Shown piece by piece: positions 21,632-39,192 of a stretch of 64,000 nucleotides of DNA. The position numbers were made by a program, and so were the translations under genes. The notes beneath the pieces are model-generated. The model made no database searches and was not told the origin of the DNA. It saw only the letters and a program-made list of their open reading frames with translations. The stretch's first letter is position 1. Every line of letters begins with the position of its first letter. The DNA is taken from IMG/VR virus record IMGVR_UViG_3300011113_000640, positions 124,001 to 188,000 of that record; one strand, 5' to 3'.

Positions 21632-21641
21632 AGTAGTGTAT

Positions 21642-23207: not shown

Positions 23208-24331
23208 AGTAAACTACTTATTTCGGGCCATAGTTCGGCAAACTTTCCACACTGATCCGGATGATAGTGTGACTCTATCTGTTGTATGTGATCAGCCAAG
23301 GCCGGGCGCAGATCCTGTTGGCAAGGATTTCGTAGATTACCGATTACCTGTGTAAGGAATCCGCGTTCACTGGCTGATAAGTCAAGTCTGTTCAAGACCT
23401 TTGACACTTCTTTTTCTGCCGCCTGTTGTATGTCAGTGCCCAGTTTCGTAGGATCAAGATATTCGTGTTCAAAAACGTTCTGCCAGTGTATTTCTAGCTC
23501 TTGTTGTTTGACCCATTCTACAAATTCGCACAACCTGGTGGCATTGTACACATTATAAACAGCATGTATGCCCACTTGATGCCCAGGTAGTCTGGTCAAG
23601 ATTCCTAAATTTTGTTGCATCAACGACCAGTCGCCGCCGTGCCTGACATATTCATATCGTGGACCTATGTTATCAAAACTCACATTCCAGCCCACATTAT
23701 GTCGATCAGACAACAAGCGGAAAATGCGGTTTGAGGCTAGATCCACACTGAGATTTGTTATAAGGTTTACCTGTGCTGATGCAGGAACTACAGCCAAAAT
23801 TGATTCGTTTTCTTTCAGCAACAAAGGTTCGCCGCCTATCAAGGCCACTTGACTGATGCTGTCTTGATATTGACTCAGATACTCACATACCTGATGTATA
23901 TAAGGTCTGGTTCCCGAGCGAACCGGAATGCCTTTTAGGTCGGCCCATTTGGAGCTGCTTTTTTCACCGCAGTAGTTGCAACTGAGATTGCAGGTAGTGT
24001 TCCAACGCACATCTATCAGCACAGGTCTATGCTCCATGTTGTCCACTGCTGTAGCATCAAATCCTGGATTCAATTGGTTGTGCCAGTCACGTTCACTGCG
24101 TCCATAGCCGTCGGCCTGTATGCAGTTTTGACAAAACTCAGGGTGCATGCGACCTTGCCGCAGAGTTTGTCGTATTTCCTGCATGACAGGGCCGTGCAGG
24201 ATCTGTTCAATGTTGTGCTCGTTGAGATTGCCCAACATGTTGGGATCTCCTGCACAGCAGGTTTTGACATCACCTCTGGGATTGATATGCAAGCCTCGCC
24301 AAGGAGCTGCACAGTAAACTTTTGACATCAA
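23204..24331 (-). CDS. Radical SAM protein with N-terminal SPASM/twitch-like domain
   Basis: CAAPW...GDVKTCC...CQNC, then CNLSCNYC and GGEP. Confidence 0.85.
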   Translation of the reverse strand: MMSKVYCAAPWRGLHINPRGDVKTCCAGDPNMLGNLNEHNIEQILHGPVMQEIRQTLRQGRMHPEFCQNCIQADGYGRSERDWHNQLNPGFDATAVDNMEHRPVLIDVRWNTTCNLSCNYCGEKSSSKWADLKGIPVRSGTRPYIHQVCEYLSQYQDSISQVALIGGEPLLLKENESILAVVPASAQVNLITNLSVDLASNRIFRLLSDRHNVGWNVSFDNIGPRYEYVRHGGDWSLMQQNLGILTRLPGHQVGIHAVYNVYNATRLCEFVEWVKQQELEIHWQNVFEHEYLDPTKLGTDIQQAAEKEVSKVLNRLDLSASERGFLTQVIGNLRNPCQQDLRPALADHIQQIESHYHPDQCGKFAELWPEISSLL

Positions 24332-24526
24332 CTACTTATAGGGATTTTCGCCAGTAAGGCCAGGTTTGGCAAACCATAACTTGAACCAAGGTTCGGTGCC
24401 GGGTTGGATGTTTTTGTTACGTTGGAAACGGGCCACGTGTGTGCCTGTTCGAGATATGTTGCTGCCCGCAAGAGGTTTTAACTTGGACTTAGGATAAACA
24501 CCCTGGCCAAACTCACTGAATCGCAC
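24332..24526 (-). CDS. Small hypothetical protein (possible head-internal protein)
   Basis: Probable GTG start giving MRFSEF...; C-terminal PGTEPWFKLWF. Confidence 0.5.
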   Translation of the reverse strand: MRFSEFGQGVYPKSKLKPLAGSNISRTGTHVARFQRNKNIQPGTEPWFKLWFAKPGLTGENPYK

Positions 24527-24528
24527 AA

Positions 24529-24969
24529 TCAATTACACCACGACTGCTTGGCGTCGCCGTAGTATTCTCTGGCAAAGCCATTGCGGATCAGTTCAGCACG
24601 TAAACTAACACCATCCAGGATCATGTCGCCCAGCACACGACCACCAAACTTGTCCCACGAGTAAAGAATCACTTGATGTTTTTTAGTTGATGCCACAGCT
24701 TTTTTGGTAAACTCCGTGGCAGCCTGACCACGGGCATCTTCCGACGGACATTGGGCGCGATGTCCTTTTTCGGGTGTGTCCACACCAAACACACGCACAG
24801 CCAGTTCAGGCTTGAGTGGTTGTGGAAGAAATGGTGCGGCAATCACAATGGTATCTCCGTCCGTGACACGCACGATCTGTGTGTCATAAGTGGCAGAATT
24901 TTTGGGTATTTTGCCTTGAGCAAATGCCAATGCAGGCACGGTCAATAATAACAATAGGAGTTTTTTCAT
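24529..24969 (-). CDS. Thermonuclease (SNase-like) with signal peptide
   Basis: MKKLLLLLL..ALAFA signal; DGDT, VRVFGVDTPE, DKFGGRVLG and GFAREY motifs. Confidence 0.9.
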   Translation of the reverse strand: MKKLLLLLLTVPALAFAQGKIPKNSATYDTQIVRVTDGDTIVIAAPFLPQPLKPELAVRVFGVDTPEKGHRAQCPSEDARGQAATEFTKKAVASTKKHQVILYSWDKFGGRVLGDMILDGVSLRAELIRNGFAREYYGDAKQSWCN

Positions 24970-24984
24970 TTAAATTTTTTCCGA

Positions 24985-26601
24985 TTAATTTGTAAGTTCT
25001 TCCCAGCCCAGTTTCCACAATAGGTCAGCGTTGTTGGCTGTGTAGGCCACTGCCAGAGTCAAGGTGCTGGGTGTTCCGGTCGCTGTTCTCCATAGTTGCA
25101 GGCGACGTTTGATGTCTTCGCTGATCTCTACTTCGTCTCGGCTGCTACTCAGTCCAGCATAGACCACAGTACCGTCAGTGATCACATTGCTGTGTATGGC
25201 GGTTTGAACAACTGATCCGGCCACGTTGCTGAAACTGGCAGTAAAGGTGGCATTTTCAATCAATTGAAATTGTCCGTATCTAACATCAATTAGCAACAGG
25301 TCCAGTTGAGCCGGTACAACTACTGCGTCAGGATAGGCTGGATTTAGTCGTATACTGCACAAGGCTGTGACAGTGTTACCTGCCGCAACTCGTGTTGGAA
25401 CTGTGCCGTTAGTCACATAACCAATCTTGGTGCTGGGGGTATAGCCGCCCTCGCTTATCACAGTGCTACAAATCTGTTTCATGGTGCTGGCACCCGAAGT
25501 AGCACCAGTGTTAGTTATTTCATATCGAGGATTTAAGGTAGCAGTGGTCATGTATACCGTGGTGTTACCCGGCTGATTGGCATGTTGGAATGTGTGGCAC
25601 ACGATGAACACACCGTTGATCACAAATCCTGTTCTAACATTGCCTACACCCAGCCACTCAACGTCACACCAAAAAATCTGTGTCAGCGTAGGATCTAAAA
25701 CTATGCCCGATGGATTGCCGGCCAACAAGGTGTTGCCGTTCCATGAGGCTTGCGGAATTCTTTCTTCAACTATGCCGCCGGTGACACTGCTGCGAATCAC
25801 TAGATTCAGGGTAGTGCCCACTGCTTCAAAGTAGATGCCGTTGTCGGCTGTGAAGTAGCCCACACGCTGGCGACAGTTGGCTTTGAGTGTGGCCATGGCA
25901 AAGGTATTCATGATCAACAAGCTCTTGCCGGGTTGATAGGTCTGAACTGTTTTGCTTTGTCTGATCACACTGGATCCACTGGTGGCAGATACATTTAGAT
26001 TGAACGAACTTTCATTGGCCACATACACCACATTGCCGCCTGTGGCTGTGATGTTTGAAAACTGATCACCGTCTATGTAACGATTTTGGCTGTCAAACAA
26101 GGTAAAGGGATTACTGACACGGAGTCGGCCAAACGCATCAAGATTGGTGCCACCTATGGTAGTTGACACATTGCCACCAGTAATATTAGCGTTAACTGTA
26201 CCGGTGATGCCCACGTTGCCTGTAATTGGTGGCAAAGCAGTGATTCCGGCTATGTTCCCAGTGATGCCTACATTGCCGGACGTTATGGCAACATTGACGT
26301 TGCCACTAACCACCCATGGACTTGTACCTTGAAGCACAGTGACGTTGCCAGTAATCACATCCACATTTACATTGCCGCCAATCGGCAGATAGGGTGTGGT
26401 TATATTTCCTAAACTACCAACAGCCGTGATATGGTTGTCGACTTCACCCGGAATGGTCACATTACCGGTGAGTGTGATGTTGGCGCCTTCGGTTAATCCT
26501 GTGCGCACAAAAACTTGGCCAGTGGTACTATTCAGCTCCAGAGCCTGGGTGATATTACGTAGATACCACGGTGCTACTTCAGTTGGTTCAGGATAGGCCA
26601 T
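24985..26601 (-). CDS. Putative virion structural protein
   Basis: G/N/V/T-rich repeats followed by DAFGRLRVS...YQPGKS...EWLGVG domain; late promoter. Confidence 0.6.
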   Translation of the reverse strand: MAYPEPTEVAPWYLRNITQALELNSTTGQVFVRTGLTEGANITLTGNVTIPGEVDNHITAVGSLGNITTPYLPIGGNVNVDVITGNVTVLQGTSPWVVSGNVNVAITSGNVGITGNIAGITALPPITGNVGITGTVNANITGGNVSTTIGGTNLDAFGRLRVSNPFTLFDSQNRYIDGDQFSNITATGGNVVYVANESSFNLNVSATSGSSVIRQSKTVQTYQPGKSLLIMNTFAMATLKANCRQRVGYFTADNGIYFEAVGTTLNLVIRSSVTGGIVEERIPQASWNGNTLLAGNPSGIVLDPTLTQIFWCDVEWLGVGNVRTGFVINGVFIVCHTFQHANQPGNTTVYMTTATLNPRYEITNTGATSGASTMKQICSTVISEGGYTPSTKIGYVTNGTVPTRVAAGNTVTALCSIRLNPAYPDAVVVPAQLDLLLIDVRYGQFQLIENATFTASFSNVAGSVVQTAIHSNVITDGTVVYAGLSSSRDEVEISEDIKRRLQLWRTATGTPSTLTLAVAYTANNADLLWKLGWEELTN

Positions 26602-26614
26602 AATATACTATTTA

Positions 26615-26914
26615 TTAGGGCTGGTAGTACACAATTTCACCTGTGGCAGGATCAAAATACAGCTGGTTGAGTCCAGCAGTGCTATTCACCACACGCACAT
26701 TGCCCAAAAAGGTGTTGGCTCCGGTAACCTGTATGATTTTTGTGAGTGCTCCAGTGGCATTGCCAATGTAGATTTCATTGGTGTTGATGTTCACGGTCAT
26801 TTCGGCAGGTCTGGCGTTGCCGTTGTAGTTTGTAACGGTTTCCTGGGCATTGTCCTTCATCACGGTACGGCTTATACCCGTGAGATCTTCATAGGGTGGT
26901 GGCGGATTGGCCAT
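26615..26914 (-). CDS. Small fibre-like structural protein
   Basis: 99 aa; the segment RPAEMTVNINTNEIYIGN resembles fibre N-terminal modules. Confidence 0.5.
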   Translation of the reverse strand: MANPPPPYEDLTGISRTVMKDNAQETVTNYNGNARPAEMTVNINTNEIYIGNATGALTKIIQVTGANTFLGNVRVVNSTAGLNQLYFDPATGEIVYYQP

Positions 26915-27306
26915 TATCTAGGATATCCTCGGAAAGGTCGGATAGGACTGACTGTGTCCACTGACTTGGGTTCTTCACTGGCAGCCGAGCTGACCAGCTT
27001 TTTGCCCCCGGGTGTCTTGGTCATTTTTAGCGCCAGGTCGATCACTGTATCCACATTGGCATCAAAACCCGATATCACACCATGTTCGCCAAAGGCTGTT
27101 TCTGCTTCCCAGGGCGGCATAAAGTGATCTACTTGATCTTGATCTTTGCCGCGGTCACTTCTGGCACGGGCCATGGCCACACCAAATCTGTAGTTTCTGT
27201 AAGGATCTGCGGCACTGAGGCCAGGCAGGACATAGGTATAACGCAGGGGTTCCGAGATCTCGGGCGGAAGCTCTCGTTGTTCACGGATGAACTCTCGGGC
27301 TCTCAT
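26914..27306 (-). CDS. MRAREF-family paralog 1 (putative head-internal protein)
   Basis: Begins MRAREFIRE; contains YRFGVAMA; ends TVSPIRPFRGY. Confidence 0.6.
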   Translation of the reverse strand: MRAREFIREQRELPPEISEPLRYTYVLPGLSAADPYRNYRFGVAMARARSDRGKDQDQVDHFMPPWEAETAFGEHGVISGFDANVDTVIDLALKMTKTPGGKKLVSSAASEEPKSVDTVSPIRPFRGYPR

Positions 27307-27701
27307 CGGCCGTATCCCCCAAATCCTGTCACAGGACTGGTCTTGTTGACCCAGTCTGCTTCGGTGCTACGATTGTCTGTGAGCTTCTTGACTTCTCCAG
27401 CTCCCACTGATTTGGCAGCTGCGTTGATGATTTTTAAGTCGGCATCACTGTAAGTGGCCAAGAGTGGATCTCCAGCAAAAGCACCTGCTGGAGGTGTGGG
27501 ATAATCAGGTGCACCGGCCATGGCTATACCAAAACGCCATTGGGTGTAAGGACTGCCACCTTGTTTGTTTGAGCTGATGTCAGGCATGCTGATGGCGCCT
27601 TTGATGGCCGAGTGTTGACTCTTGGCCAGTTTCCGTCCGTTGGCTGGAACGTCAGCAGCACTGCCAAATTTTGCCTCAGCTACAAATTCTCTTGCTCTCA
27701 T
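27303..27701 (-). CDS. MRAREF-family paralog 2
   Basis: Start reassigned to 27701 (ATGA overlap): MRAREFVAE; WRFGIAMA; ends KTSPVTGFGGY. Confidence 0.6.
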   Translation of the reverse strand: MRAREFVAEAKFGSAADVPANGRKLAKSQHSAIKGAISMPDISSNKQGGSPYTQWRFGIAMAGAPDYPTPPAGAFAGDPLLATYSDADLKIINAAAKSVGAGEVKKLTDNRSTEADWVNKTSPVTGFGGYGR

Positions 27702-28576
27702 TCCATGTCCTGTAAATGCATGTGACCAAACGGTGGATTGCTCTTGACGTTTTGCCATAATTCTCTGTTGCTCATTATCTCCACCCAGACATCTGTGGTG
27801 GGACGATTCAAACTCCAAAAATCAAACTTCATGTGACTGCTCACAGGGCGGCAATACAATGTGCGTTCTTTGGGCACACACAGTTGTTGGCTTGTGGTGC
27901 GCATTTTCTTACCGTCGGTGCTGGTCCTAAGTATATTTAGTTGCGGATCATTGATGTAGACTTGGCACATGCCATCCACTAGATCCTGTGGTGTGCTGGC
28001 TGACTTTACCACGGCTTCTGCCAACAACAAGCGGCTTTCACTGCTGATACGGTCCAGGGTTTTACGTTTATCTCTTGGACTGCGTTGCATACCGGCTGTG
28101 GGCATCCAAATGCCGTGATTGGTCCTGGCCACTGTTTGATCTTGGGGTATCTTTTTGGCTTTAAATCTGTAAGGACGTTTTCCGTCCCAGTTGCTGGCTT
28201 CAATCAAGAACATGTTGTCCTGATCAAATACCATGGTGCAACCACACAGGCGTTGTTGGACTAAAAATTTTGCCGCTGCCTCGGCCGTAGGCAAGGTCAA
28301 GGCTTCGGCAATCATCTGGCCATCAGGGCTGGTTTTGACCCGGCCAGATTCAACTTCGGTTTCATCATTGCCCACATCCAGGCTGGTGTTCAAGATACTT
28401 ACACCTCGGCTGTTGATGCCTTCTTTGTAGCCAGTGATTTCGTCATGCATCATCATGCGATCGGCGCTTTCGGATTCGCTTTCGATGAAGTCTAATACAG
28501 GTATGTAGGTTCGGTCTCGATTTTTGGCACCGGCCCATCCAATACCGTCAAAGTATTTGGCTACGATCACGCACAT
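27698..28576 (-). CDS. Ntn-hydrolase (Cys nucleophile; NRDE/C45-like)
   Basis: Cys at position 2; KNRDR, EGINSRG and RTNHG motifs. Confidence 0.7.
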   Translation of the reverse strand: MCVIVAKYFDGIGWAGAKNRDRTYIPVLDFIESESESADRMMMHDEITGYKEGINSRGVSILNTSLDVGNDETEVESGRVKTSPDGQMIAEALTLPTAEAAAKFLVQQRLCGCTMVFDQDNMFLIEASNWDGKRPYRFKAKKIPQDQTVARTNHGIWMPTAGMQRSPRDKRKTLDRISSESRLLLAEAVVKSASTPQDLVDGMCQVYINDPQLNILRTSTDGKKMRTTSQQLCVPKERTLYCRPVSSHMKFDFWSLNRPTTDVWVEIMSNRELWQNVKSNPPFGHMHLQDME

Positions 28577-28577
28577 T

Positions 28578-28958
28578 TTATTTTGCGTAGCCCCGGAAAC
28601 CTTTTACTGGGCTTGTAGTATTCACATATTCAGCCTCAAGACTGCCGGGCAACACATGATCTCGTGGATTCATGCCCAGTTTTTTCATGATGGCTTTGAG
28701 TTTTTTCCTATCATATTCAGTGTAGGCACTGAACACCGGAAGGTTTCCAAAGAATCCAATGTCATCAACCTTGCCTATTTGGTCTGGGTCCATGCCGGCC
28801 AGGCTCGACACACGATAGAAATCATAATAGCGGCCCCAATACACATCGCCATTTCCACCCGGACCAATTATGCCAGGATGTGCCTGATCAAATTCGTGAT
28901 TGGCAGTGGATCTGGTTCCGCCCCTACTAGCTTCGGTGACGAATTCTCGGGCACGCAC
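28578..28958 (-). CDS. MRAREF-family paralog 3
   Basis: GTG start, MRAREFVTE; ends TTSPVKGFRGY. Confidence 0.6.
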   Translation of the reverse strand: MRAREFVTEASRGGTRSTANHEFDQAHPGIIGPGGNGDVYWGRYYDFYRVSSLAGMDPDQIGKVDDIGFFGNLPVFSAYTEYDRKKLKAIMKKLGMNPRDHVLPGSLEAEYVNTTSPVKGFRGYAK

Positions 28959-28960
28959 TG

Positions 28961-29254
28961 TTATTGTCCTGCGGTGTTGAACACACTATATTGTGCAGAA
29001 CTTTGTGTGCCTAATTCCAATGCTGTAAATGGTGAGCCTACTATTGTAACTTTGTTTCCGGCACCTGAATAACCTTCAAACACTGTGTTGGCTGGAATCG
29101 TGATTGGTGCAGTGTAGATATTGCCAATGGCTGCGGCGGTTCCCAAGGCTGTGGCATAGGCTTGATAAGTCACTGCGTTGGCAGCCGTGGAGATCTGTAG
29201 TTTGTCTGTGTAAACAGTTGTGTTAGCTAGTGTGGTGTATACGTTTGCGGCCAT
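28961..29254 (-). CDS. Small Ala/Thr-rich structural protein
   Basis: 97 aa with SD AGGA; composition typical of virion proteins. Confidence 0.55.
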   Translation of the reverse strand: MAANVYTTLANTTVYTDKLQISTAANAVTYQAYATALGTAAAIGNIYTAPITIPANTVFEGYSGAGNKVTIVGSPFTALELGTQSSAQYSVFNTAGQ

Positions 29255-29269
29255 TTTATTTTCCTTTGT

Positions 29270-30007
29270 TTACCATGCACGACACGACCAATATCGCGCC
29301 TTGGTCTTTGGTCCCGGGTTGTCACAGTTGTGTCTTGCTCTAAAACTCTTTCTACGAGCCGGATTGGATTTTTTGATCTTCATGGTCTTTTGACCCAATC
29401 TCTTGGCAGTATTTCCTCCATGACCAAAGTTCACTTTCTTTACATTGCCGGTCTTGGGATCTTTCACATACACTTTTGATTTTTTCACATCGCCAGCCAT
29501 GGGTTTGTTGAGAGTGACTTCACGGCCTTGATACTTGGCTTCATCAGTGGCCAAGCGTTGTGCGGCATCAATAGCGGCTTCTTTGCCTGCTACCACAGCA
29601 GCATCTTGATCGTCTTTCAACTGCTCTGTCTCGCCAGTGGCTGTACGCCAAAAGTCTTCGATCCAGTCTTCATCACCATAGCGATCTTTGAACTCTTCCA
29701 GGCTCATGCGTAGTGCAGCCGTATACATTTCTTTTTTCATGGCGCCTTCGCCTACCAAGGTGCCATAGCCCATGGTCTCCATGACTATGTTGCTGTCACC
29801 CTCGTCGGTGTCTTCCAAGGTAGCCCATTCAGCCAGGGCTGCATTGATCTCGGGCGTACTATCTAACAGTATGCAATCGTCTGCTACTTCAATGATGTAA
29901 GTTTCACAAACAACTTCATCAGGAAGTTCAAAGGCAAAGATGTCACCTGCTGCAGGTGTGTTCATCCACTGTTCACTTTCCGCGAGATAGTCTTTTAGCG
30001 ATTTCAT
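29270..30007 (-). CDS. Putative head-internal protein with basic C-terminal domain
   Basis: MKSLKDYLAE N-terminus; acidic middle; C-terminal RRKSFRARHNC...KARYWSCRAW. Confidence 0.6.
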   Translation of the reverse strand: MKSLKDYLAESEQWMNTPAAGDIFAFELPDEVVCETYIIEVADDCILLDSTPEINAALAEWATLEDTDEGDSNIVMETMGYGTLVGEGAMKKEMYTAALRMSLEEFKDRYGDEDWIEDFWRTATGETEQLKDDQDAAVVAGKEAAIDAAQRLATDEAKYQGREVTLNKPMAGDVKKSKVYVKDPKTGNVKKVNFGHGGNTAKRLGQKTMKIKKSNPARRKSFRARHNCDNPGPKTKARYWSCRAW

Positions 30008-31899
30008 TGTGCTTTGTAGTTTTGATATAAACGGAACAGGTTGCGCTCAAGTTCCACTGACTCTTCCATTGAAACTTGGCGACGTAATTGGCTTGCAATC
30101 ACAGGAACTGTTGTTTGTCCAGTTGATTTGGGACCATTGAGGCCGCCTGAATACTGCATGGCATTGTCGCTGGTTTCTGTGTTTGTGGGCCAGTCTGGGC
30201 TGTTCTCATCTAATTCTTCACAGCCACAGGGTGCTTTGCCACAGGTGCCACAACTTTCTGCGTTGTCGTGACTGCCCATGCCAGCCATCTTTAACAATGC
30301 GGCCAAGGCTTCGGCATCTTCGCCGTCGGCACTGACAGTGATGTTCTTGGATGGATTACCATCAGGACCAGTGTTCATGTTCACACTTACATTCATGCCT
30401 TCTGTGAGTGCCTGCCGGAACTTTTGGTCCAGGCTTTCATACACACCTTTGCCAAACTGCATGCCACCTTTGGATTTACCACCAGTGGGTGCTGTGGCCA
30501 CTGATCCGGCTACAGTTGTTTCTTCGACTTCGTCTTTCTTCTTGCCTTTGGCTTGTTTTGCTGCTTGTTTCATGGGTTCAGTCTTGTTGCCATCTTTGTC
30601 AAGATCCAGGAAGTCAGGTTTGCCGGCTTCTTTGACTTTCTTTGGCAAACCTTTTTCTTTGGTTGCGGCAAACTTGCGTAGTTCACCCTTGGGCATCCGG
30701 GCCATTTCTTTCGAAGCACCACGCAACTCGCTTTTGGGAATCTCGCCCTTTTGTGCGGCATGTGCTATGCCAGCGGCTCTGCGTTGTGCTTGACTGACGG
30801 CTTTCTCTGCCACAGGTTCCGCATCATTTTTTTGTTGATGCATGTATTGATTGCTGCTGTTGATGTAGTCCAAGGCCTTGGTAATCTTGCTTTGTACCCA
30901 CTCTGGCAGATTTTCGTCGTCACCAAGAATGCTGTGCAGTTCTTTGGCGGCCATGGCCAAACTTTCTAAATCGTCCTTGGCCATTTCGCCTTCGCGGTCG
31001 TATTCACCTTTGTTGATCAAGCTCACACTTTCAATGTCTTCCGAACTCATGTTTGATGGGCGGGTCATCATGACACCATCGGTGTCGAGGTCTTCTTCAG
31101 TCTTCTCTTTTCTAGTGCCTTTGTGCTTCCAGGCACCCTTGGTAGTGCGCTCAGGACCCTTGGCAGGACCTTTTGGACGACCTTTCTTCTTGGGTTGATC
31201 ACTAACTTCTGCGTCGTCTTTTTCTTCAGGTTCTTCTTTTCTTGTGTAACGCTTGCTGTAGCCTGTGTCTTTGACATCATATCTTGGATGCTCGTCTTTG
31301 GTGGCAAACATTGATTTGGCCACTTCAGGATCAAATGCTGTGCCAGCACTGCGAGATTTTTTGGTTTCTTTTTTCTCTTCGATGTTGCTGGTGTCTTTGT
31401 ATTTTTTGCCATCCAGTTCAAACTCGCCACCCCGGGGTGTGCTCTTGAGCTTGGCTGTGAATGCGTTGCCTTCGTCGGCCATTTCTTCGTCCATCTTATC
31501 ATGCTTGGCACGTATTTTGGCCATGGTCTCTTTGCTGGCACCTTCACGACCGGCCTTCTGCAGGGCCTTCATGCCAGTCTCGCCGTATTTTTTCTTGCCC
31601 AGGTATGCTTGCAATGCACTCTCATCCATGTCGCCAGCACTTTCCTTGGCACGCAGTTTGGCCAACACAGCGCCGGCCACTTTCTCACCGCGCTCTTTGC
31701 TGCCATAACGCTCACCTGCACTCTTGGCAATCTTGGAGAACATCTTGCCAGGCTTGCCAATGTCTTTGCCCGCACGAGCCTTCTTGGCTGAATAGTCTCT
31801 AGTGCTGGCTTCGGCCACAGCTGATTGAGCGCTCTCATTGAGGTCTTGTTTCTTGGCCAAGTCAGCCAACTTCTTGTTTAGGTCGTAAAAAAATGTCAT
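30004..31899 (-). CDS. Modular Lys/Glu-rich putative head-internal polyprotein (contains DUF3008-like and DxDxDG modules)
   Basis: Basic modules separated by hydrophobic-x-E sites; KAVSQAQRRAAG...KGLPKKV resembles DUF3008; also DLDKDGN. Confidence 0.55.
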   Translation of the reverse strand: MTFFYDLNKKLADLAKKQDLNESAQSAVAEASTRDYSAKKARAGKDIGKPGKMFSKIAKSAGERYGSKERGEKVAGAVLAKLRAKESAGDMDESALQAYLGKKKYGETGMKALQKAGREGASKETMAKIRAKHDKMDEEMADEGNAFTAKLKSTPRGGEFELDGKKYKDTSNIEEKKETKKSRSAGTAFDPEVAKSMFATKDEHPRYDVKDTGYSKRYTRKEEPEEKDDAEVSDQPKKKGRPKGPAKGPERTTKGAWKHKGTRKEKTEEDLDTDGVMMTRPSNMSSEDIESVSLINKGEYDREGEMAKDDLESLAMAAKELHSILGDDENLPEWVQSKITKALDYINSSNQYMHQQKNDAEPVAEKAVSQAQRRAAGIAHAAQKGEIPKSELRGASKEMARMPKGELRKFAATKEKGLPKKVKEAGKPDFLDLDKDGNKTEPMKQAAKQAKGKKKDEVEETTVAGSVATAPTGGKSKGGMQFGKGVYESLDQKFRQALTEGMNVSVNMNTGPDGNPSKNITVSADGEDAEALAALLKMAGMGSHDNAESCGTCGKAPCGCEELDENSPDWPTNTETSDNAMQYSGGLNGPKSTGQTTVPVIASQLRRQVSMEESVELERNLFRLYQNYKAQ

Positions 31900-31903
31900 G
31901 CTG

Positions 31904-32512
31904 TTATCCTCTTGGGTTGGCGCCGGTGGCTGGGCGTGGTGGTCGCTTGACCTTGGTCATAGGGCTTGAAGTGCCCATGGGTAAATCATTTGTGGTCTTG
32001 GCTGGTGGTGTCTTGCCTCCAGCTACAGTGAAATCACTGCGATAAGCATTATTCAATACTCCATGCTCACCGTAGGGTGCTGAATAATCTTTGCTGAGTG
32101 CTTTCTGCTCTGCGTCAGGAGCAGGATAGTCTGTGTCTGTGAGCAAGTCTTTGTTTTGATCCGCGATCTTTTCACGCTCGACGTCCATGCTGTCTTCGTG
32201 TGGTGTGGTCAACATGATGATTCTATTGGGATCCAAGAACAACAACTGTGCGATCTGTTTGATCTGTGGTTCAATGGCTGGATAGCGGAATTCACAATCC
32301 ATACTGGTCACTGAGTCATTGCTGTGCTTGGGGAAGTCAGCGGGCTTGAGTTGCACTGGCGTGGTTTTTGGCGAACCAATTTTCACAGGATCAAACTGTT
32401 TGAGTTTTTCAGTCAGCATCTTGACAAAGTCAGGAGCAACGTCACCCACGATTTTGATCCTATAGCGGTAGGTTCTTTCGCTTTCGGCCAGGTATTCTTG
32501 AAATTTTTTCAT
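31904..32512 (-). CDS. Putative head-internal protein
   Basis: N-terminus MKKFQEYLAE resembles the T4 capsid targeting sequence; TAAATA at 32531-32536. Confidence 0.6.
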   Translation of the reverse strand: MKKFQEYLAESERTYRYRIKIVGDVAPDFVKMLTEKLKQFDPVKIGSPKTTPVQLKPADFPKHSNDSVTSMDCEFRYPAIEPQIKQIAQLLFLDPNRIIMLTTPHEDSMDVEREKIADQNKDLLTDTDYPAPDAEQKALSKDYSAPYGEHGVLNNAYRSDFTVAGGKTPPAKTTNDLPMGTSSPMTKVKRPPRPATGANPRG

Positions 32513-32533
32513 ATTTGTATCCCTATATGATAT

Positions 32534-33031
32534 TTATGCTTTTGTATCTTTTTGGTCTCTAGAGGCCATTAGACGCTCTAGCAAATCGTTGCGACTCAAG
32601 ATCTGCCCGTGTGCTGTTTCCACTGCTTCATCTCCGGTCTTGCTGGCACGATCCTGATCCATTTTGAGCTTTTTCAGTTGCAGATCAACCATTTTGAGTT
32701 TTTTGTTTAGCTTGGCCGTTTTGGCTGTGAGCGCATGGCCCAGCATGGTGCCAGCCACTGCAAATATTTCAGCACTGTATCTGCTGTCAACTTGCATGCC
32801 CAAGTCCATGAGATCATCAAAGGTTTCCTGGGCTTTGGCAGCCAGGGCATCCATTTCAGTGTCTGACGCATCCAGGCCTCGCACAGCCGGCAGGGCTTGG
32901 TCGATCTTGTCTATGGTAGCGTCGATTTCTTTGAGTGCGATTTGTGTGGTAGGAATAGATTCGGGTTCGGTGGTTTCGCTGTTGCAACCACTGGGCGGCA
33001 AATCAAAAAGTTCTTCCAGTTTTCGGGTCAT
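32534..33031 (-). CDS. Probable terminase small subunit (gp16-like)
   Basis: Helical pattern LMDLGMQVDSRYSAEIFAVAGTML...DLQLKKLK...SRNDLL recalls T4-like gp16. Confidence 0.5.
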   Translation of the reverse strand: MTRKLEELFDLPPSGCNSETTEPESIPTTQIALKEIDATIDKIDQALPAVRGLDASDTEMDALAAKAQETFDDLMDLGMQVDSRYSAEIFAVAGTMLGHALTAKTAKLNKKLKMVDLQLKKLKMDQDRASKTGDEAVETAHGQILSRNDLLERLMASRDQKDTKA

Positions 33032-33034
33032 GAC

Positions 33035-33478
33035 CTATTTACCGGTTTTTTTGCTGCCTTGATGGAATATTTGGTCTTCGTTTATGACTCGGAATGTGAG
33101 TCCGTTGCGACGTGCCCATTTGGTTGCAGAGTCCCACTTGGCGTAGTTCACTGCCACAATAGCACGGTCTCGGTCGGTCATTTTACTTTCAATTAGACTT
33201 TGTTTTTTGGGCTTGATTTCGATCAATTCAGCACGTGTGGTATTGTCACGTCCACGGTAAGTCACAAAAAAATCTGGCACATACATGCTCTGCTTGCCAG
33301 TGATGGGATTTCTATAAGGTATGCTAATGCTTTCACTGGCCCATTGCACAATGTTGTCATTGCTGTCAAGAAACATCATGAAAGTTAGCTCCCAGCCCGA
33401 TCTGTATCTGGGTGTGCCTTTGCCCACATATTTGGCGGGATTTTTACAGGTGTAGATGCCTTGGCGAAAATTTGGCAT
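33035..33478 (-). CDS. Head completion nuclease (T4 gp4-like, TnsA-type fold)
   Basis: YRSGWE, WASE, YVPDF and EIKP motifs. Confidence 0.85.
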   Translation of the reverse strand: MPNFRQGIYTCKNPAKYVGKGTPRYRSGWELTFMMFLDSNDNIVQWASESISIPYRNPITGKQSMYVPDFFVTYRGRDNTTRAELIEIKPKKQSLIESKMTDRDRAIVAVNYAKWDSATKWARRNGLTFRVINEDQIFHQGSKKTGK

Positions 33479-35065: not shown

Positions 35066-35689
35066 CTACGCTGGATTGGCTACACCTGTGGCAGTACCTT
35101 GCTTCGGATCAGTGCTTATAATCTGATTGGCATTGTCAAATCTAATGGTCATGGTCACTGTCATAGGTTCGTTGGTACCATAGTTACCATCATTGTAGTT
35201 GACAGCTTGCAAGTAGCAACCATAGATTTCCCAGGTTTCAAGCGCAACGGGTTTAACTCCGTTGTTGCCATCTAGTACCTGGAACTTGGTCAAGAATTTG
35301 TAGTCGATACCAGCGGCTGCTGAACTTTGCTCAACAAAGTCAATTTGTTTTTGCAGTTGTTGTCCAACTAATCTGGAGATATTGCCAGCAGCATCATCAC
35401 GAATATTGCAGGTGAGATCTTGCCAGACATGCTTGCCAGCAATTTTAACCGTGCTGTTGTACACAGGCAGGTCGATGTTTTCAAAAGTAACATTAGGACG
35501 TGTGAAGTCTATTACCTGTCGTGTCAACTCTAGAGTTTCACTAGAACCGCTGGTTCCAAAATTTTCAAAGTAAACTCTGAAACGATACTTCAGTTTGGGC
35601 ATCAACAGGGTTTGATTGGAGGCACTCTGGTCGGTGCCAAAAATACCCCCGGTGTTAACTGACATTTTTTGTAGCGATGATGTTGGCAT
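35066..35689 (-). CDS. Tail tube protein (gp19-like)
   Basis: YRFRV...RPNV...AGKHVW...TMTIRFD; immediately downstream of the sheath gene. Confidence 0.8.
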   Translation of the reverse strand: MPTSSLQKMSVNTGGIFGTDQSASNQTLLMPKLKYRFRVYFENFGTSGSSETLELTRQVIDFTRPNVTFENIDLPVYNSTVKIAGKHVWQDLTCNIRDDAAGNISRLVGQQLQKQIDFVEQSSAAAGIDYKFLTKFQVLDGNNGVKPVALETWEIYGCYLQAVNYNDGNYGTNEPMTVTMTIRFDNANQIISTDPKQGTATGVANPA

Positions 35690-35736
35690 GGTTATGTTCC
35701 TGTTTTGATTTATTTATGTACCAAATCTACCCTTGA

Positions 35737-38700
35737 TTAGGCTGTTGCCTGGGCTTGTATGGTTCCTGTGTTCTGTATACGCATTGGTATATAGATAAAC
35801 TCTACAGCCTTGACAGGTTCAATAGCGATATCCACATATAGTTCGTTGGCGTCTATAGTAGCTGGTGTGTTGTTTGTTGCATCACAAATCACCAAATAGT
35901 CATACAGGGCACGCTTGCCTACCAAGTCAACCATGAGTGAGGTAATCTGGTTGGCTATGCTTGAACGAGTAATAGTGTCATTGGGCTCGAACAAGTACTG
36001 GTTACCAATGATTTCTAAACGTCCACGCAAGTATGCTACCAAGCGTGCCACATTGATACGATCCAAGGCAGTTGCGTTTCCTTGCAAGGTATGGTTACCA
36101 AAGTTGGTGATGCCTGTGCCAGGTATAAACGTGATTGGATTGATGTCGTTCTGATACAGCACATCACGCAGGCCTTGATTCACACCCAGGGGTTGGAATT
36201 CGCCAGTTTGTCCAACTAGATAACCAATCTGTAGTGCATTGTCTACTACCCCGCGGCGTAGGCCAGCTGGTGCAAACCATGGATAAGCCACGGCGTCGTT
36301 GCGGATTATGGTGCGCAACATCATGTGACTAGGTGCTGTGACCACAACGTTGCCAGTGAGGTCTGTGGTGGTACAACTTGGATAGAAAGCAGCCGAGTAG
36401 GCATCACCTTGTGCCAAATTGCCTTCACTGAACACAGTATTGGATGAAACAACGCCAAAGTCTGAGTAGATGTTGGAGGCTGTGGCCCAGTTCACAATGT
36501 TTTCAGGATCCAGACGCAACGGTGTGTCTACTATGGTAAATCCGGTATCGCCGCGGTCGTTGTTGAGCACAACCATGTTGGGGGCCAGTTCTGGATAGCT
36601 GGTACAAGCCAGCAAGTTGAACTGTGCCTGCTGTTCACGCAAGGTTGTGCTGGTATCTATGGCTGCACGCAAGGCCTTGACTATCAAGAAACGTTGTGCC
36701 TTGCGACCCATGTTGGGGCTGCCGTCAGCATTGTTGGCACTGGCTGTGAGCCAGGTATTGGTTTGGCTAGGCAATACCTCATTTGGAAAGTTTGTGGCAT
36801 TGAAATAGTTGGCCTGGAAGCTCTTAACGTTGAAGCCACTACGACGTGTGTTCCATAACAGCATGCCTTCTGGATACAACAAGGGATTTGGAGCATCAAG
36901 ATCTGTGTAGTCGCTCAGTATCAGCGGATCACTACCAGTGGCAATGGGTGGTATGGGATCTGTTACAGGATTTGTGGTTCCGTTGGGAGCCCAGCGTGCA
37001 TCTGCAAACAAGATGCCATTGATGGTGGTTTGATCAGTGTTGTCTACAGCCACCCATTGGTCTTCGCTATCCACACTCTGCCAGCGATAAATCTTGGGAT
37101 AGTTTTCTAAATCACTGGTATCAATCCATAAGTCACCTTCAACCAAAGGACTTTCAGCTGAATCAGTCTGTGTGGTAGGTGCTGTGGCACTGAATATAGG
37201 ACCATCAGCGTTGGTAAGGCTGAGGTTGTACCCACGCACATCGCTGTTTACCATTTGATAGCCCATCCAGGCACCGTTGTTTTGTATCATGATGTCAGCT
37301 GTGGTAGCATCACTGTAGTACCAGTAGGTTCCAGTGGCAGGATTCAGACTAGGTGCACTAGCACTGGCTGTGTAGGTAAATGTTGGAGAGCCCACCCAGT
37401 TGCTGAGAATCAAACCAGTGGCCACGCCATCGACATAGTTGCTTCTAATTCCCGTTACTGTAATATTAAATCCAGCATCTGCCAAAGGACCGTTGGTACC
37501 ATCTACTAGATAGATATCTCCACCGGTGGAGTGTGTGAAAACTATGGCACCCGAGCTATTGATTTCTGCGCTGACCGGTGCACCCAAGCCAACTGCGGCG
37601 CTGACTGCACTGATAAAGTCTGCTGCTGTGGTGCCGGTAATTGTTGCAGTTGCTGGAGTGGTTACAGTTGCAGTTCCTGCTTGGGTATAGGCAATAGTAA
37701 ATGTGGAACTGGCCACAAATGTAGGATTGGTTTGGTTGCCTGTGATTATGGTGTCACCAGTGGCCAAACGCGAAAGAACCAAAAAGCTCGAAGTCAGGCT
37801 GTCCAAGGGATTTATTTGAGCATAGGTTGAGCCCGCCGCAAGATTTTGACCGCCACTTGACGGATCTAGACCATACAACGCTGCCGCATCTGAATCATAT
37901 ACCGGGCAGGTTTGTAAAACAAAAGTCCCTAAGGTGCTGTCATATCTTTTGATCTGGATCAGCATGCCTTGATTTACTGCATTGGTCTGCTGGAAAACGC
38001 TGCCGGTTGGAGCACCACCGCCCACAGGACTTGGTGTGGAACTTGTAGTTCTCCAGTTTGGAACAGCGTAGTTGGCTCCGTAGGCATAAATTGGAGCACT
38101 GTAGGTTTTGCCTGTGATGCCTAAGGTTGCCAACGGTGTACCAGTGTAGTTCAATATCTGTACAATTCCATTGCCGTCTTCGGTGCTGCCATCAGATGTG
38201 GCCGAGCTGTCAGCAAACACTTGTAGTTTACCGCCCACATTAGCTGCGTAAACTCCGGTAATAGCCAAAGTATTGATTTGATTGGCCAAGGTGGTCACGG
38301 TATTGTATGTCGACGTAGATATAATCACGCCGTTGATTTCAATGCTGCCCGCACCAATCGTGGTAGGTGCCAAGGTCCCTGCCACTGTGGGCCAGGCTGT
38401 TTTCCAGTCGTCGCTGCCAACTTGCACCCAGGTATTGAACAACGAACTCAAATAAGTGGAGTTGGTTTGACTGGCTGTGGCGCCTCCACGTTTGTAATAA
38501 GTTGGATTGTACACGTTTGTGGCTACCACTGCGTAGTTGCCTATGCTGCCGTAGCTGTCTAAGGGCACAGTTGTGGATGGTTGTAAATTTGCTGTGTCAG
38601 TAATGACACTGGCTGTTTTTTTGGTAAATGCCGATGTGGCCTGATTCCATTCATTGATACCATAGGTGCTGTTGGTGGTATCAAACCAGTAAGTGTTGTT

Positions 38701-39093
38701 TAGTGGAGAACCAGTGGGACGTGTCAGGCTGGCTGTGAGTGCGGCCAGGTCAATGTCGGCACGCATGACATAGGCCAAGCTGCTGGCACCCAAAGCGGAA
38801 TATGCAGCCAACAAACCGTATTCATTGAGCTCATAGCCATTGATAGGTGTTCCTGCTGTGGTGTTGTAAAAGAATGGTACTCCAAACGTGCTCAGCAAGT
38901 CACGTTGGCTGGTCATCAAATAGACCTTGCCAGCATTGGCAGCCAGAGTTCCTGGAGCTATGCCGGTGCCTGCGCCGGAAACTTTGTTTTCTGCTGTGGC
39001 CAGCAAGATAAATGGCACCGAACCAGCAGAAGCTGGTGTGTAGTTGCTTTGGTCAATTACACTGACTTGTACACCTGGGGATAGTAAGGCCAT
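35737..39093 (-). CDS. Tail sheath protein (gp18-like)
   Basis: N-terminal LSPGVQV; C-terminal WFAPAG.RRG, INPI, RINVARL, FEPND and PVKAVEFI. Confidence 0.95.
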   Translation of the reverse strand: MALLSPGVQVSVIDQSNYTPASAGSVPFILLATAENKVSGAGTGIAPGTLAANAGKVYLMTSQRDLLSTFGVPFFYNTTAGTPINGYELNEYGLLAAYSALGASSLAYVMRADIDLAALTASLTRPTGSPLNNTYWFDTTNSTYGINEWNQATSAFTKKTASVITDTANLQPSTTVPLDSYGSIGNYAVVATNVYNPTYYKRGGATASQTNSTYLSSLFNTWVQVGSDDWKTAWPTVAGTLAPTTIGAGSIEINGVIISTSTYNTVTTLANQINTLAITGVYAANVGGKLQVFADSSATSDGSTEDGNGIVQILNYTGTPLATLGITGKTYSAPIYAYGANYAVPNWRTTSSTPSPVGGGAPTGSVFQQTNAVNQGMLIQIKRYDSTLGTFVLQTCPVYDSDAAALYGLDPSSGGQNLAAGSTYAQINPLDSLTSSFLVLSRLATGDTIITGNQTNPTFVASSTFTIAYTQAGTATVTTPATATITGTTAADFISAVSAAVGLGAPVSAEINSSGAIVFTHSTGGDIYLVDGTNGPLADAGFNITVTGIRSNYVDGVATGLILSNWVGSPTFTYTASASAPSLNPATGTYWYYSDATTADIMIQNNGAWMGYQMVNSDVRGYNLSLTNADGPIFSATAPTTQTDSAESPLVEGDLWIDTSDLENYPKIYRWQSVDSEDQWVAVDNTDQTTINGILFADARWAPNGTTNPVTDPIPPIATGSDPLILSDYTDLDAPNPLLYPEGMLLWNTRRSGFNVKSFQANYFNATNFPNEVLPSQTNTWLTASANNADGSPNMGRKAQRFLIVKALRAAIDTSTTLREQQAQFNLLACTSYPELAPNMVVLNNDRGDTGFTIVDTPLRLDPENIVNWATASNIYSDFGVVSSNTVFSEGNLAQGDAYSAAFYPSCTTTDLTGNVVVTAPSHMMLRTIIRNDAVAYPWFAPAGLRRGVVDNALQIGYLVGQTGEFQPLGVNQGLRDVLYQNDINPITFIPGTGITNFGNHTLQGNATALDRINVARLVAYLRGRLEIIGNQYLFEPNDTITRSSIANQITSLMVDLVGKRALYDYLVICDATNNTPATIDANELYVDIAIEPVKAVEFIYIPMRIQNTGTIQAQATA

Positions 39094-39192
39094 AACCGAT
39101 TCCTCTTTGTTTAATAATGATATTTATCGGTTGGATCAAAAAACTACCAGTTAGGAATGCCTTTATAAAGGTCCGTGTTGCTAAATATGCTT

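What the first reader, a model, noticed from the sequence alone, without database searches (positions are those of the whole stretch)
30004..31899. Polyprotein-like gene: small basic modules separated by prohead-protease-type sites
Seen: LNE|S, VAE|A, MDE|S, ADE|G, IEE|K, VAE|K, VKE|A, VEE|T, VYE|S, LTE|G and LDE|N fall at the borders of distinct 25-60 aa modules, including YSAKKARAGKDIGKPGK..., ALQAYLGKKKYG..., GNAF...ELDGKKY, NLPEWVQSKIT, a DUF3008-like unit, a DxDxDG loop and CGTCGKAPCGC. Known: T4 gp21 cuts after (I/L)-x-E. Inference: a cassette polyprotein cut in the prohead into about ten peptides (DNA-condensing or injected effectors), with modules shuffled between phages. The 19835 and 29270 proteins show the same pattern.
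Basis: partly seen in the sequence, partly recalled or inferred. Interest (0 to 1): 0.7.

Follow-up and report, generated by a model that had tools for sequence, protein, structure and literature searches.

The report
Modular head-internal protein precursor of jumbo phage
A 631-residue late gene of an uncultured 320-kb T4-like phage is a string of small interchangeable modules joined by short hydrophobic-x-Glu motifs and sits among genes carrying T4-type capsid-targeting leaders, so it is probably packed into the phage head and cut there, but cleavage has not been shown.

Summary
The ORF (30004-31899, minus strand, 631 aa) and all 11 listed x-x-E sites are real. In this one sequence such sites are no more frequent than its composition predicts (18 seen, 19.3 expected). 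The comparative evidence is stronger. The family is very large: 4,488 clusters at 50% identity, all uncultured. Its members share a C-terminal core (G-Z), and eight small modules come, go and change order. Of 455 inter-module junctions, 273 hold [LIVM]-x-E, against 126 expected. Almost none occur inside the G-Z and D-H units. Every FFYDLN-type leader examined (85) ends in L/I/V-x-E.

The phage encodes a T4 gp21-type prohead protease. Its own scaffold and capsid propeptide are enriched in L/I-x-E. Five neighbouring genes begin with near-copies of the T4 capsid-targeting sequence, for example MKKFQEYLAE against T4 MKTYQEFIAE. That arrangement recurs in 80 of 80 related loci.

Best reading: a late, capsid-targeted internal protein precursor whose leader is removed and which is probably cut further at junctions. 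"About ten peptides" and "basic modules" are overstated, since two sites lie inside a fold and only three or four fragments are basic. Nothing here shows cleavage or packaging directly. I rate it a new variant of a known kind.

The parts
30004..31899 (-). 631-aa modular ORF (P0001), including the stop codon
   Evidence: Its start overlaps nothing. Its stop overlaps the next gene's ATG by 4 nt, and the gap to the upstream gene is 4 nt.
31834..31899 (-). Leader, aa 1-22: MTFFYDLNKKLADLAKKQDLNE|S. It has an amphipathic helix (aa 3-16) followed by a disordered L-N-E site. Proposed role: targeting propeptide.
   Evidence: Conserved in more than 80% of 120 homologues. All 85 FFYDLN-type leaders in diverse representatives end in L(65)/I(16)/V(4)-x-E, 13-37 aa from the leader start. 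[LI]xE is enriched 3.8-fold in leaders.
31636..31803 (-). Module A, aa 33-88: basic two-helix unit, preceded by VAE30|A
   Evidence: About 90% identical in the otherwise divergent P0210.
31489..31626 (-). Module B, aa 92-137: helical, pLDDT 93-95, preceded by MDE93|S
   Evidence: (border motif in 100% of 56 cases)
31384..31473 (-). Module C, aa 143-172: helix plus beta-hairpin, bounded by ADE143|G and IEE175|K
   Evidence: (P1 Glu 100% at the N-border; [LI][ED]E in 79% at the C-flank)
31108..31353 (-). Modules D and H, aa 183-264: helix plus hairpin, then an AT-hook-like PKKKGRPKGP. There is no junction site between them.
   Evidence: G240 and R241 are invariant and P242 at least 90% conserved in 70 sequences. 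D>H junctions: 0 of 14 with a site.
30832..31020 (-). Module E, aa 294-356: helical hairpin containing NLPEWVQSKIT
   Evidence: This is the only part that matches cultured phages. It is found in Synechococcus phages S-H9-1, S-WAM2 and DSL-LC02, in a different protein context.
30625..30813 (-). Module F, aa 363-425: DUF3008, preceded by VAE365|K and followed by VKE424|A
   Evidence: Pfam PF11450, E 2.5e-15. [LIV]AE|K is kept in 120/120 close homologues and 99% of distant ones.
30496..30624 (-). Module I, aa 426-468: optional insert with a DxDxDG loop, ending VEE460|TT
   Evidence: Missing from most close homologues: gap share about 0.8 over aa 427-452 and 0.5-0.7 over aa 453-467; the VEE460 site is kept in 52-55 of 120. 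It is found after the leader, mid-protein, or after Z in other members.
30007..30480 (-). Core G-Z, aa 474-631: alpha-beta-beta-alpha unit, Cys4 knuckle, invariant [LVIM]DE565|N, disordered NSPDWPTN...GGLNGPKSTGQ stretch, C-terminal helix
   Evidence: Present in nearly all of the 151 representatives. E500 and E565 are invariant in 82 sequences. G>Z junctions: 8 of 137 with a site. No fold match.
31904..32512 (-). Upstream neighbour, 202 aa, with leader MKKFQEYLAE|S (T4 CTS-like)
   Evidence: phrog_14802 'virion structural protein'. The PA5oct homologue gp202 was detected in virions by ESI-MS/MS.
29270..30007 (-). Downstream neighbour, 245 aa, with leader MKSLKDYLAE|S and a C-terminal basic Cys module (phrog_7595)
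   Evidence: Homologue in L005: MRGLREHIAE|T.
26914..28958 (-). Three paralogous small genes (26914-27306, 27303-27701, 28578-28958) with leader MRAREF[IV]xE| and C-terminal SPVxGFxGY. An Ntn-hydrolase-like gene (27698-28576) lies between them.
32531..32537 (-). ATAAATA, a T4 late-promoter-like motif 25 nt upstream of the 202-aa gene. No further copy occurs before 26615, so 202aa-P0001-245aa... is probably one late transcription unit.
   Evidence: 10 of 11 copies in the window are on the coding strand, and 8 lie 14-72 nt upstream of gene starts, including sheath and tube

Best explanation
P0001 is a late-expressed precursor of internal (packaged, probably ejected) head proteins. The host virus is an uncultured 320-kb T4-like jumbo phage related to Pseudomonas phage PA5oct. 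Proposed mechanism: (1) a conserved amphipathic N-terminal leader takes the protein into the scaffolding core of the prohead, as the T4 capsid-targeting sequence does; (2) the phage's gp21-type serine protease removes the leader after L-N-E22; (3) the same protease probably also cuts at the conserved [LIVM]-x-E junctions in the disordered linkers (candidates 30, 93, 143, 175, 365, 424, 460, 565). This would release several mini-proteins of about 3-21 kDa, some strongly basic or DNA-binding (A, F/DUF3008, the invariant AT-hook in H), which stay with the DNA. Each cassette carries its own junction motif, so cassettes can be swapped between phages and still be released. Shown here: the anatomy, the family-wide junction statistics, the genomic context and the presence of the protease. 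Inferred: targeting, every cleavage, DNA binding and ejection.
For: The protease (PF03420, E 4.9e-27) is encoded 36 kb away in the same genome, next to scaffold and capsid genes. Its likely specificity was read from its own substrates. The scaffold has 19 [LI]xE against 7.4 expected (no shuffle of 3,000 reached 19, p<0.001). The first 60 aa of the capsid protein have 4 against 1.0 (p=0.006). Neither shows [VM]xE or [SAG]xE excess. This matches the published T4 rule L/I-X-E (PMC9026906).

The five flanking genes begin M[KR]xx[KRQ][ED][FY][LIV]xE. These are the only five such ORFs in 320 kb. They resemble the T4 CTS MKTYQEFIAE (PMC8442874). All 80 related IMG/VR loci have such ORFs on the same strand (252 in total), against 0 of 1,556 opposite-strand ORFs. 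In 173 distinct leaders, P1 is E in 97% and P3 is L 68, I 67, V 29, M 4.

The P0001 family's own leader always ends in L/I/V-x-E, although the spacing varies. Junctions: 273 of 455 carry [LIVM]xE against 126 expected (z 17). Control motifs are at or below chance. The motif is present in rare, rearranged junction types too (B>F 8/8, H>F 7/7, E>A 5/5, Z>I 12/12). Several motifs (LNE22, IEE175, VEE460|TT, LDE565|N) are conserved islands inside predicted disorder, so helix capping cannot explain them.

A late-promoter-like motif and translational coupling link the gene to CTS-bearing genes. The PA5oct homologue of the upstream neighbour is a mass-spectrometry-confirmed virion protein.
Against: There is no direct evidence of packaging or cleavage, and no cultured phage carries the G-Z core. 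In P0001 itself the sites are not enriched, unlike the scaffold. Junction P3 is mostly V or M, whereas leaders and known-type substrates prefer L or I, so the junctions may be poor substrates. The P0001 leader differs from the neighbours' CTS and from T4's. Motifs are inherited together with their modules, so z-scores overstate independence. Some border motifs (MDE|S, ADE|G) coincide with helix starts and could be capping boxes. The models have low confidence (pLDDT 60-62).
Confidence: 0.5

Rival explanations
1. It is a packaged internal protein that loses at most its N-terminal leader and otherwise stays in one piece as a flexible beads-on-a-string DNA-binding protein. The hydrophobic-x-Glu motifs at module starts are structural (helix N-cap or hydrophobic staple, or linker signatures that travel with each module), not cleavage sites.
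For: Most modules begin with a helix just after the motif (MDE|SALQ helix 92-118; ADE|GNAF helix 146-153). Junction P3 is mostly V or M rather than the L or I of leaders and scaffold. [LI]xE is not enriched in P0001. In T4 the IPs are cut only once, next to the CTS (PMC8442874).
Against: Several conserved motifs sit in long disordered stretches with no adjacent helix (VEE460|TT, LDE565|N, IEE175, LNE22). The Pfam DUF3008 model starts after VAEK, so that motif is not part of the general domain. V occupies P3 in 17% of CTS-type leaders of this clade. The control motifs [LIVM]xD and [LIVM]xxE are not enriched.
Confidence: 0.25
2. It is a late but non-virion protein, for example a DNA-binding or condensing factor, or an assembly chaperone acting in the infected cell. 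It sits among head and tail genes only by operon position.
For: Invariant AT-hook-like GRP core. Modules are of unknown function. PA5oct lacks the gene at the syntenic position, so it is not an essential structural component.
Against: The conserved leader ending in a protease-type site has no obvious role outside the prohead. The gene is embedded in, and translationally coupled to, CTS-bearing genes in 80 of 80 loci.
Confidence: 0.15
3. It is an auxiliary scaffolding or core protein (like T4 gp22, gp67 or gp68) that is chopped up and expelled before DNA packaging, with no function after assembly.
For: T4 core proteins are cleaved into multiple fragments at L/I-X-E (PMC9026906). P0001 has multiple junction motifs and a C-terminal amphipathic helix.
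Against: Its [LI]xE density is at chance, whereas the phage's real scaffold shows 2.6-fold enrichment. It lies 36 kb from the protease-scaffold-capsid block. Strongly conserved small folded, basic and AT-hook modules that are exchanged between phages argue for payload rather than disposable scaffold.
Confidence: 0.1

Closest known systems
T4 internal proteins IPI/IPII/IPIII and their capsid-targeting sequence (CTS, MKTYQEFIAE)
   Same: The phage is T4-like and has a gp21-family protease. Neighbouring genes carry near-identical 10-aa leaders ending [LIV]-x-E. The locus is a variable cluster of unrelated small proteins sharing only the leader, as described for T-even IPs (PMC3012670; PMC9026906). 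P0001 shares hydrophobic residue 4, acidic residue 6 and hydrophobic residue 7 with the CTS. This last point is an inference from aligning MTFFYDL with MKKFQEY.
   Different: P0001's leader is a different, longer sequence (cut site at 20-22, not 8-10). The protein is 631 aa and multi-modular, with internal junction motifs. T4 IPs are single small proteins cut once.
Polyvalent proteins of phages and conjugative elements (Iyer, Burroughs, Anand, de Souza, Aravind 2017, PMC5512222)
   Same: Many unrelated domains sit in one polypeptide, encoded among late or structural phage genes and proposed to be packaged and released as separate units. Architectures are shuffled between elements.
   Different: Those proteins carry enzymatic effector domains and an embedded metallopeptidase for self-processing. 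P0001 has no enzymatic or peptidase domain. Its modules are 25-85 aa, and release would be in trans by the prohead protease.
Inner-body and ejection proteins of phiKZ, 201phi2-1 and SPN3US, cut at several sites by a gp21-like protease
   Same: Jumbo phages; many head proteins are processed C-terminal to Glu at a three-residue motif; redundant sites occur in propeptides (PMC9026906).
   Different: The motif there is S/A/G-x-E. There is no sequence relationship. Those proteins are not built of exchangeable mini-cassettes, as far as the cited review describes.
T4 prohead core proteins gp22, gp67 and gp68
   Same: They are cut into multiple peptides at L/I-x-E by gp21.
   Different: They are enriched in sites and adjacent to gene 21. 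P0001 is not enriched and lies elsewhere.

Membership tests
T4-type CTS-targeted internal proteins | N-terminal ~10-aa leader resembling MKTYQEFIAE, with hydrophobic residues at 4 and 7 and L/I-x-E at 8-10 | tested here: not met
   P0001 starts MTFFYDLNKK, and its first L-x-E is at 20-22. The feature is met by the five neighbours, which are the real members.
T4-type CTS-targeted internal proteins | Genome encodes a gp21-family prohead protease | tested here: met
   PF03420, 92 bits against a cut-off of 27, at G000:C1:191567-192022
T4-type CTS-targeted internal proteins | Protein is present in proheads or virions and is cleaved after the leader | not testable with these tools
   No cultured member. 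Only the neighbour's PA5oct homologue has mass-spectrometry support.
Polyvalent proteins (Iyer et al. 2017) | Several unrelated domains in one polypeptide, in a late or structural phage context, with variable architectures | tested here: met
   Eleven segments (a leader plus ten modules). Order and content vary across 151 representatives. The context is late and structural.
Polyvalent proteins (Iyer et al. 2017) | Embedded peptidase (MPTase) and/or enzymatic effector domains | tested here: not met
   Pfam finds only DUF3008. There are no PDB or fold matches.
T4 prohead core/scaffold proteins (gp22/gp67/gp68 type) | Strong enrichment of L/I-x-E sites and a position beside the protease and capsid genes | tested here: not met
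   5 against 4.8 expected in P0001, compared with 19 against 7.4 in the phage's own scaffold. The gene is 36 kb from the protease.
Pfam DUF3008 (PF11450) | Match above the gathering threshold | tested here: met
   56.8 bits against a cut-off of 24, aa 367-422, full-length profile 1-57. This covers only 9% of the protein.
AT-hook DNA-binding motif | G-R-P core flanked by K/R; binds the DNA minor groove | tested here: inconclusive
   PKKKGRPKGP has G240 and R241 invariant and P242 at least 90% conserved in 70 sequences. No profile search was run and binding is untested. The resemblance is from general knowledge.

The most novel reading that the evidence does not exclude
A very large, so far uncultured family of trans-cleaved 'cassette polyproteins'. 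Each small module would carry its own prohead-protease junction. Phages could then swap mini-protein payloads by recombination and still have each one released inside the capsid and delivered with the DNA. This would be a modular peptide-payload system distinct from single-protein T4 IPs and from self-cleaving polyvalent proteins.
Probability: 0.3. Interest if true: 0.8.

Novelty: new variant of a known kind. Interest (0 to 1): 0.6.

Why it matters
If the junctions are cut, this would be a phage polyprotein built of exchangeable mini-cassettes and processed in trans by the head protease; I found no precedent in the papers searched. That would extend the T4 internal-protein paradigm to a widespread group of environmental jumbo phages: at least 4,488 clusters at 50% identity, on contigs up to about 360 kb. 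It would also define about ten new small domains (plus DUF3008) as candidate injected or DNA-associated factors. The leader and junction motifs could then be used to predict capsid cargo from sequence alone. The clear, clade-wide CTS-like leaders next to the gene are a practical handle for finding packaged proteins in metagenomic phage genomes.

Tried and rejected
1. Single-sequence enrichment of x-x-E sites: at chance.
2. Relic or internal start codons at P3 (M/V/L = ATG/GTG/TTG): rejected. At P3, Val is coded by GTG about as often as in the rest of each gene in three genes, and many P3 codons are ATC, ATA or CTC.
3. Homology of P0001 to the 598-aa protein at 19835-21631: none (BLASTP E at least 0.12).
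4. Homology to PA5oct gp203, the syntenic MS-detected structural protein with a vaguely similar N-terminus and C-terminus: none by BLASTP, hhalign (probability 0.7%) or profile search of the PA5oct record.
5. Paralogues of any module elsewhere in the 320-kb genome: none.
6. G-Z core in cultured phages: none, even at E<=1. The whole protein hits only module E, in three cyanophage species (five records).
7. Pfam on separate pieces: nothing beyond DUF3008.
8. PDB sequence searches; Foldseek against PDB with the full model and against AFDB clusters with the G-Z model; ESM Atlas. None gave an informative match, and both models have low confidence.
9. Exact T4 late promoter TATAAATA: one copy only, at chance. 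The shorter ATAAATA shows the strand and position bias.
Full report
**Observation.** The window is bases 124001-188000 of a 320,541-bp IMG/VR virus record, about 93% complete. ORF 30004..31899 on the minus strand encodes 631 aa (P0001). The protein is rich in K (84), A (70) and E (63). Shuffling gives 19.3 +/- 3.5 [LIVMAFY]-x-E sites against 18 observed, and 4.8 [LI]-x-E against 5 observed. Taken alone, the sequence shows no excess of such sites.

**Modules.** An AlphaFold2 model built on 70 homologues is beads on a string (mean pLDDT 59.7). It shows the following elements:
- helix 3-16
- helices 52-86
- helices 92-132 (pLDDT 93-95)
- helix plus hairpin 146-168
- helix plus hairpin 191-220
- helical hairpin 301-358
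- helices 370-411
- an alpha-beta-beta-alpha unit 487-538
- a C-terminal helix 605-630

These are separated by disordered stretches at 19-38, 227-300, 356-368, 416-489 and 544-605. Nine of the eleven sites lie in linkers or at helix caps. Sites 488 and 500 are inside the G unit. Pfam recognises only DUF3008 (aa 367-422, E 2.5e-15). PKKKGRPKGP has an invariant G-R core and resembles an AT-hook. The four cysteines of CGTCGKAPCGC are at least 90% conserved. Only some predicted fragments are basic: 31-93 (+7), 366-424 (+10) and 94-143 (+2).

**What kind of phage.** The window encodes the following:
- T4-type tail sheath (35737-39093) and tube (35066-35689)
- a gp4-like head completion protein (33035-33478)
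- large terminase (21642-23207)
- UvsX-like recombinase and gp32-like ssDNA-binding protein

The closest cultured relative by terminase is the jumbo Pseudomonas phage PA5oct (52.7% identity). A T4 gp21-family prohead protease (PF03420, E 4.9e-27) lies 36 kb away. It sits in the canonical block of acidic core protein, protease, scaffold and major capsid protein.

I inferred the protease's specificity from its own expected substrates. The scaffold holds 19 [LI]-x-E against 7.4 expected (no shuffle of 3,000 reached 19, p<0.001). The first 60 residues of the capsid protein hold 4 against 1.0 (p=0.006). The protease itself holds 6 against 2.4 (p=0.02). None shows an excess of [VM]-x-E or [SAG]-x-E. 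This agrees with the published T4 rule L/I-X-E (PMC9026906).

**Context.** Five genes around P0001 begin with a shared leader:
- MKKFQEYLAE|S (31904-32512)
- MKSLKDYLAE|S (29270-30007)
- MRAREFVTE|A (28578-28958)
- MRAREFVAE|A (27303-27701)
- MRAREFIRE|Q (26914-27306)

These are the only ORFs in the whole 320-kb genome that match this pattern. The T4 capsid-targeting sequence is MKTYQEFIAE. It is cut off after Glu10, with residues 4 and 7 needed for targeting and residues 8 and 10 for processing (PMC8442874; PMC9026906).

The arrangement is conserved. In 80 IMG/VR loci holding the family's core, 80 of 80 have same-strand ORFs with such leaders within 6 kb (252 ORFs). None of 1,556 opposite-strand ORFs does. 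In 173 distinct leaders chosen without reference to P3 or P1, P1 is Glu in 97%, and P3 is L 68, I 67, V 29, M 4.

The PA5oct homologue of the 202-aa neighbour (gp202) was found in virions by ESI-MS/MS (PMC7318152). PA5oct has nothing between gp202 and gp203, so P0001 and its companions form an inserted, variable locus. ATAAATA, a late-promoter-like motif, occurs 11 times in the window, 10 of them on the coding strand. It occurs 14-72 nt upstream of eight gene starts, among them sheath, tube and the 202-aa gene. The next copy downstream is at 26615. P0001 is 4 nt from the upstream gene and overlaps the downstream one by 4 nt. The group therefore looks like one late operon.

**Family.** P0001 has 3,571 scored relatives in the 90%-identity collection. 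The best 120 are 58-96% identical, and most are collinear over the full length. In these, only module I (aa 426-468) is optional. Against 1.84 billion representatives at 50% identity there are 4,488 hits at E<=1e-3 and 300 at E<=1e-30.

I mapped eleven query segments onto 151 diverse representatives. The C-terminal G-Z pair is nearly universal. A, B, C, D, H, E, F and I are present or absent and change order (E-B-F, E-A-B-F, C-B, B-A). Module I can sit after the leader, mid-protein, or after Z. In P0210 (order E-A-B-F-G) module A is about 90% identical to P0001's, although the rest of the protein has diverged. This points to cassette exchange. Module E also occurs in Synechococcus phages, at the C-terminus of a 179-aa protein with different partners. 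No cultured phage holds the G-Z core, and the genome has no paralogous modules. Module shuffling is therefore real.

**Sites at borders, family-wide.** All 85 leaders of the FFYDLN type end in L(65)/I(16)/V(4)-x-E. The site lies 13-37 residues from the leader start, so spacing varies but the motif is always kept. The second leader type (MNNMYDIL...) ends LLE|G or LNE|G. [LI]-x-E is 3.8-fold enriched in leaders.

For 455 junctions between trimmed module cores, 273 contain [LIVM]-x-E against 126 expected (z 17). 86 contain [LI]-x-E against 42 expected (z 8.4). The control motifs [LIVM]-x-D, [LIVM]-x-x-E and [LIVM]-x-K are at or below expectation. By junction type:

| Junction | With [LIVM]-x-E |
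|---|---|
| E>F | 57/58 |
| F>G | 68/76 |
| A>B | 17/17 |
| I>A | 15/15 |
| Z>I | 12/12 |
| B>F | 8/8 |
| H>F | 7/7 |
| G>Z | 8/137 |
| D>H | 0/14 |

The units delimited by the motif are therefore leader, A, B, C, D-H(-E), F, I and G-Z.

In close homologues the motifs are islands of conservation within variable linkers. Examples are [IV]AE|K in 120/120 and [LIV]DE|N in 119/120. E500 and E565 are invariant in 82 core sequences. These z-scores overstate independence, because motifs are inherited together with modules. The stronger argument is that the motif persists across different neighbours and inside predicted disorder.

**Interpretation.** The best-supported reading is that P0001 is a capsid-targeted internal protein precursor. 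Its conserved leader shares hydrophobic residue 4, acidic residue 6 and hydrophobic residue 7 with the CTS (an inference from alignment). The leader would be removed after Glu22 by the gp21-type protease. The junction motifs are plausible further cut sites, giving fragments of 3-21 kDa.

The main caveats are these:
- Junction P3 is mostly V or M (VDE, VEE, VKE, VAE, MEE, MDE), whereas leaders and bona fide-type substrates prefer L or I.
- V does occupy P3 in 17% of CTS-type leaders, which softens that caveat.
- Some border motifs coincide with helix starts and could be capping boxes.
- P0001 is not site-enriched in the way the scaffold is.
- No experiment or cultured relative exists.

The alternative that P3 residues are relics of start codons was tested and rejected.

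**Comparison with known systems.** The neighbours meet the sequence definition of T4-type CTS proteins. P0001 itself does not, because its leader is different and longer. It resembles the polyvalent proteins of Iyer et al. 2017 (PMC5512222) in being a shuffled multi-domain protein encoded among late genes and proposed to be released as separate units. It lacks their embedded peptidase and enzymatic domains. It resembles phiKZ-type inner-body proteins in multi-site processing after Glu, but the motif and the sequences differ. It is not a scaffold-type core protein.

**Verdict.** I class it as a new variant of a known kind: capsid-internal cargo of T4-like phages, here as an exchangeable-cassette precursor. 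Confidence is about 0.5 for capsid targeting with leader removal, and about 0.3 for genuine multi-site polyprotein processing.

Noticed in passing
window 26914-32512 (-): Five genes share a T4-CTS-like 9-10-aa leader (MK.F[QK][ED]YLAE / MRAREF[IV].E). These are the only such ORFs in the 320-kb genome. The same leaders flank the family gene in 80 of 80 related IMG/VR loci. This looks like a hyperplastic internal-protein locus that is absent at the syntenic spot in PA5oct.
   Followed up: yes
window 27698-28576 (-): A 292-aa protein starting Met-Cys lies inside the leader-gene cluster. There is no Pfam or PHROG hit, but language-model neighbours carry AAT (PF03417) and CBAH (PF02275) families. 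This suggests an N-terminal-nucleophile (Cys) hydrolase. It has no CTS-type leader.
   Followed up: partly
window 26914-27306, 27303-27701, 28578-28958 (-): Three paralogues (27-32% identity) share the MRAREF leader and an invariant C-terminal S-P-x-x-x-F-x-G-Y motif. A homologue in L005 ends SPIKGFSGYSK. Function unknown.
   Followed up: partly
window 29270-30007 (-); L005 7487-9076: The 245-aa neighbour ends in a basic Cys-containing module (..RRKSFRARHNCDNPGPKTKARYWSCRAW, phrog_7595). Its homologue in a distant relative is 529 aa with the same leader and the same C-terminus, so this gene also varies by internal insertion.
   Followed up: partly
window 19835-21631 (-): A 598-aa acidic protein (phrog_13484 'virion structural protein') preceded by ATAAATA shows an excess of [VM]xE (12 against 5.1, p=0.001) and of [LI]xE (14 against 9.0, p=0.04). 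It has a CxxxxxxxCPVHGxxxC cluster near its C-terminus, and PA5oct gp203 has CPVHG near its N-terminus. It is not homologous to P0001.
   Followed up: partly
window 32531-32537, 35711-35717, 39121-39127, 26609-26615, 21639-21645 and others: ATAAATA occurs 11 times, 10 on the coding strand, and mostly 14-34 nt upstream of structural gene starts. It is probably this clade's late promoter core. The full T4 octamer TATAAATA occurs only once.
   Followed up: partly
window 23204-24969 (-): A radical-SAM protein (23204-24331) and a small endonuclease (24529-24969, phrog_452) sit between the large terminase and a 538-aa virion protein. The endonuclease may be a homing-type insertion. PA5oct has a Hef-like homing endonuclease nearby instead.
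   Followed up: no
window 24985-26601 (-): A 538-aa protein (phrog_1645, virion structural protein) has an N-terminal run of GNV/TGNV repeats. It occupies the position where PA5oct has the unrelated gp203.
   Followed up: no
window 55694-61264 (-): A very long ORF of 1,856 aa lies downstream of a 672-aa protein with head-decoration or tail-fibre-like PHROG hits. It was not examined.
   Followed up: no
L002 3647-4186 (Synechococcus phage S-H9-1): A cyanophage 179-aa protein starts MKTFKQLREE and ends with module E of P0001 (GEYDYEGDMAK...NLPEWVQSKIT). The same small module is therefore reused by Kyanoviridae in another combination.
   Followed up: partly
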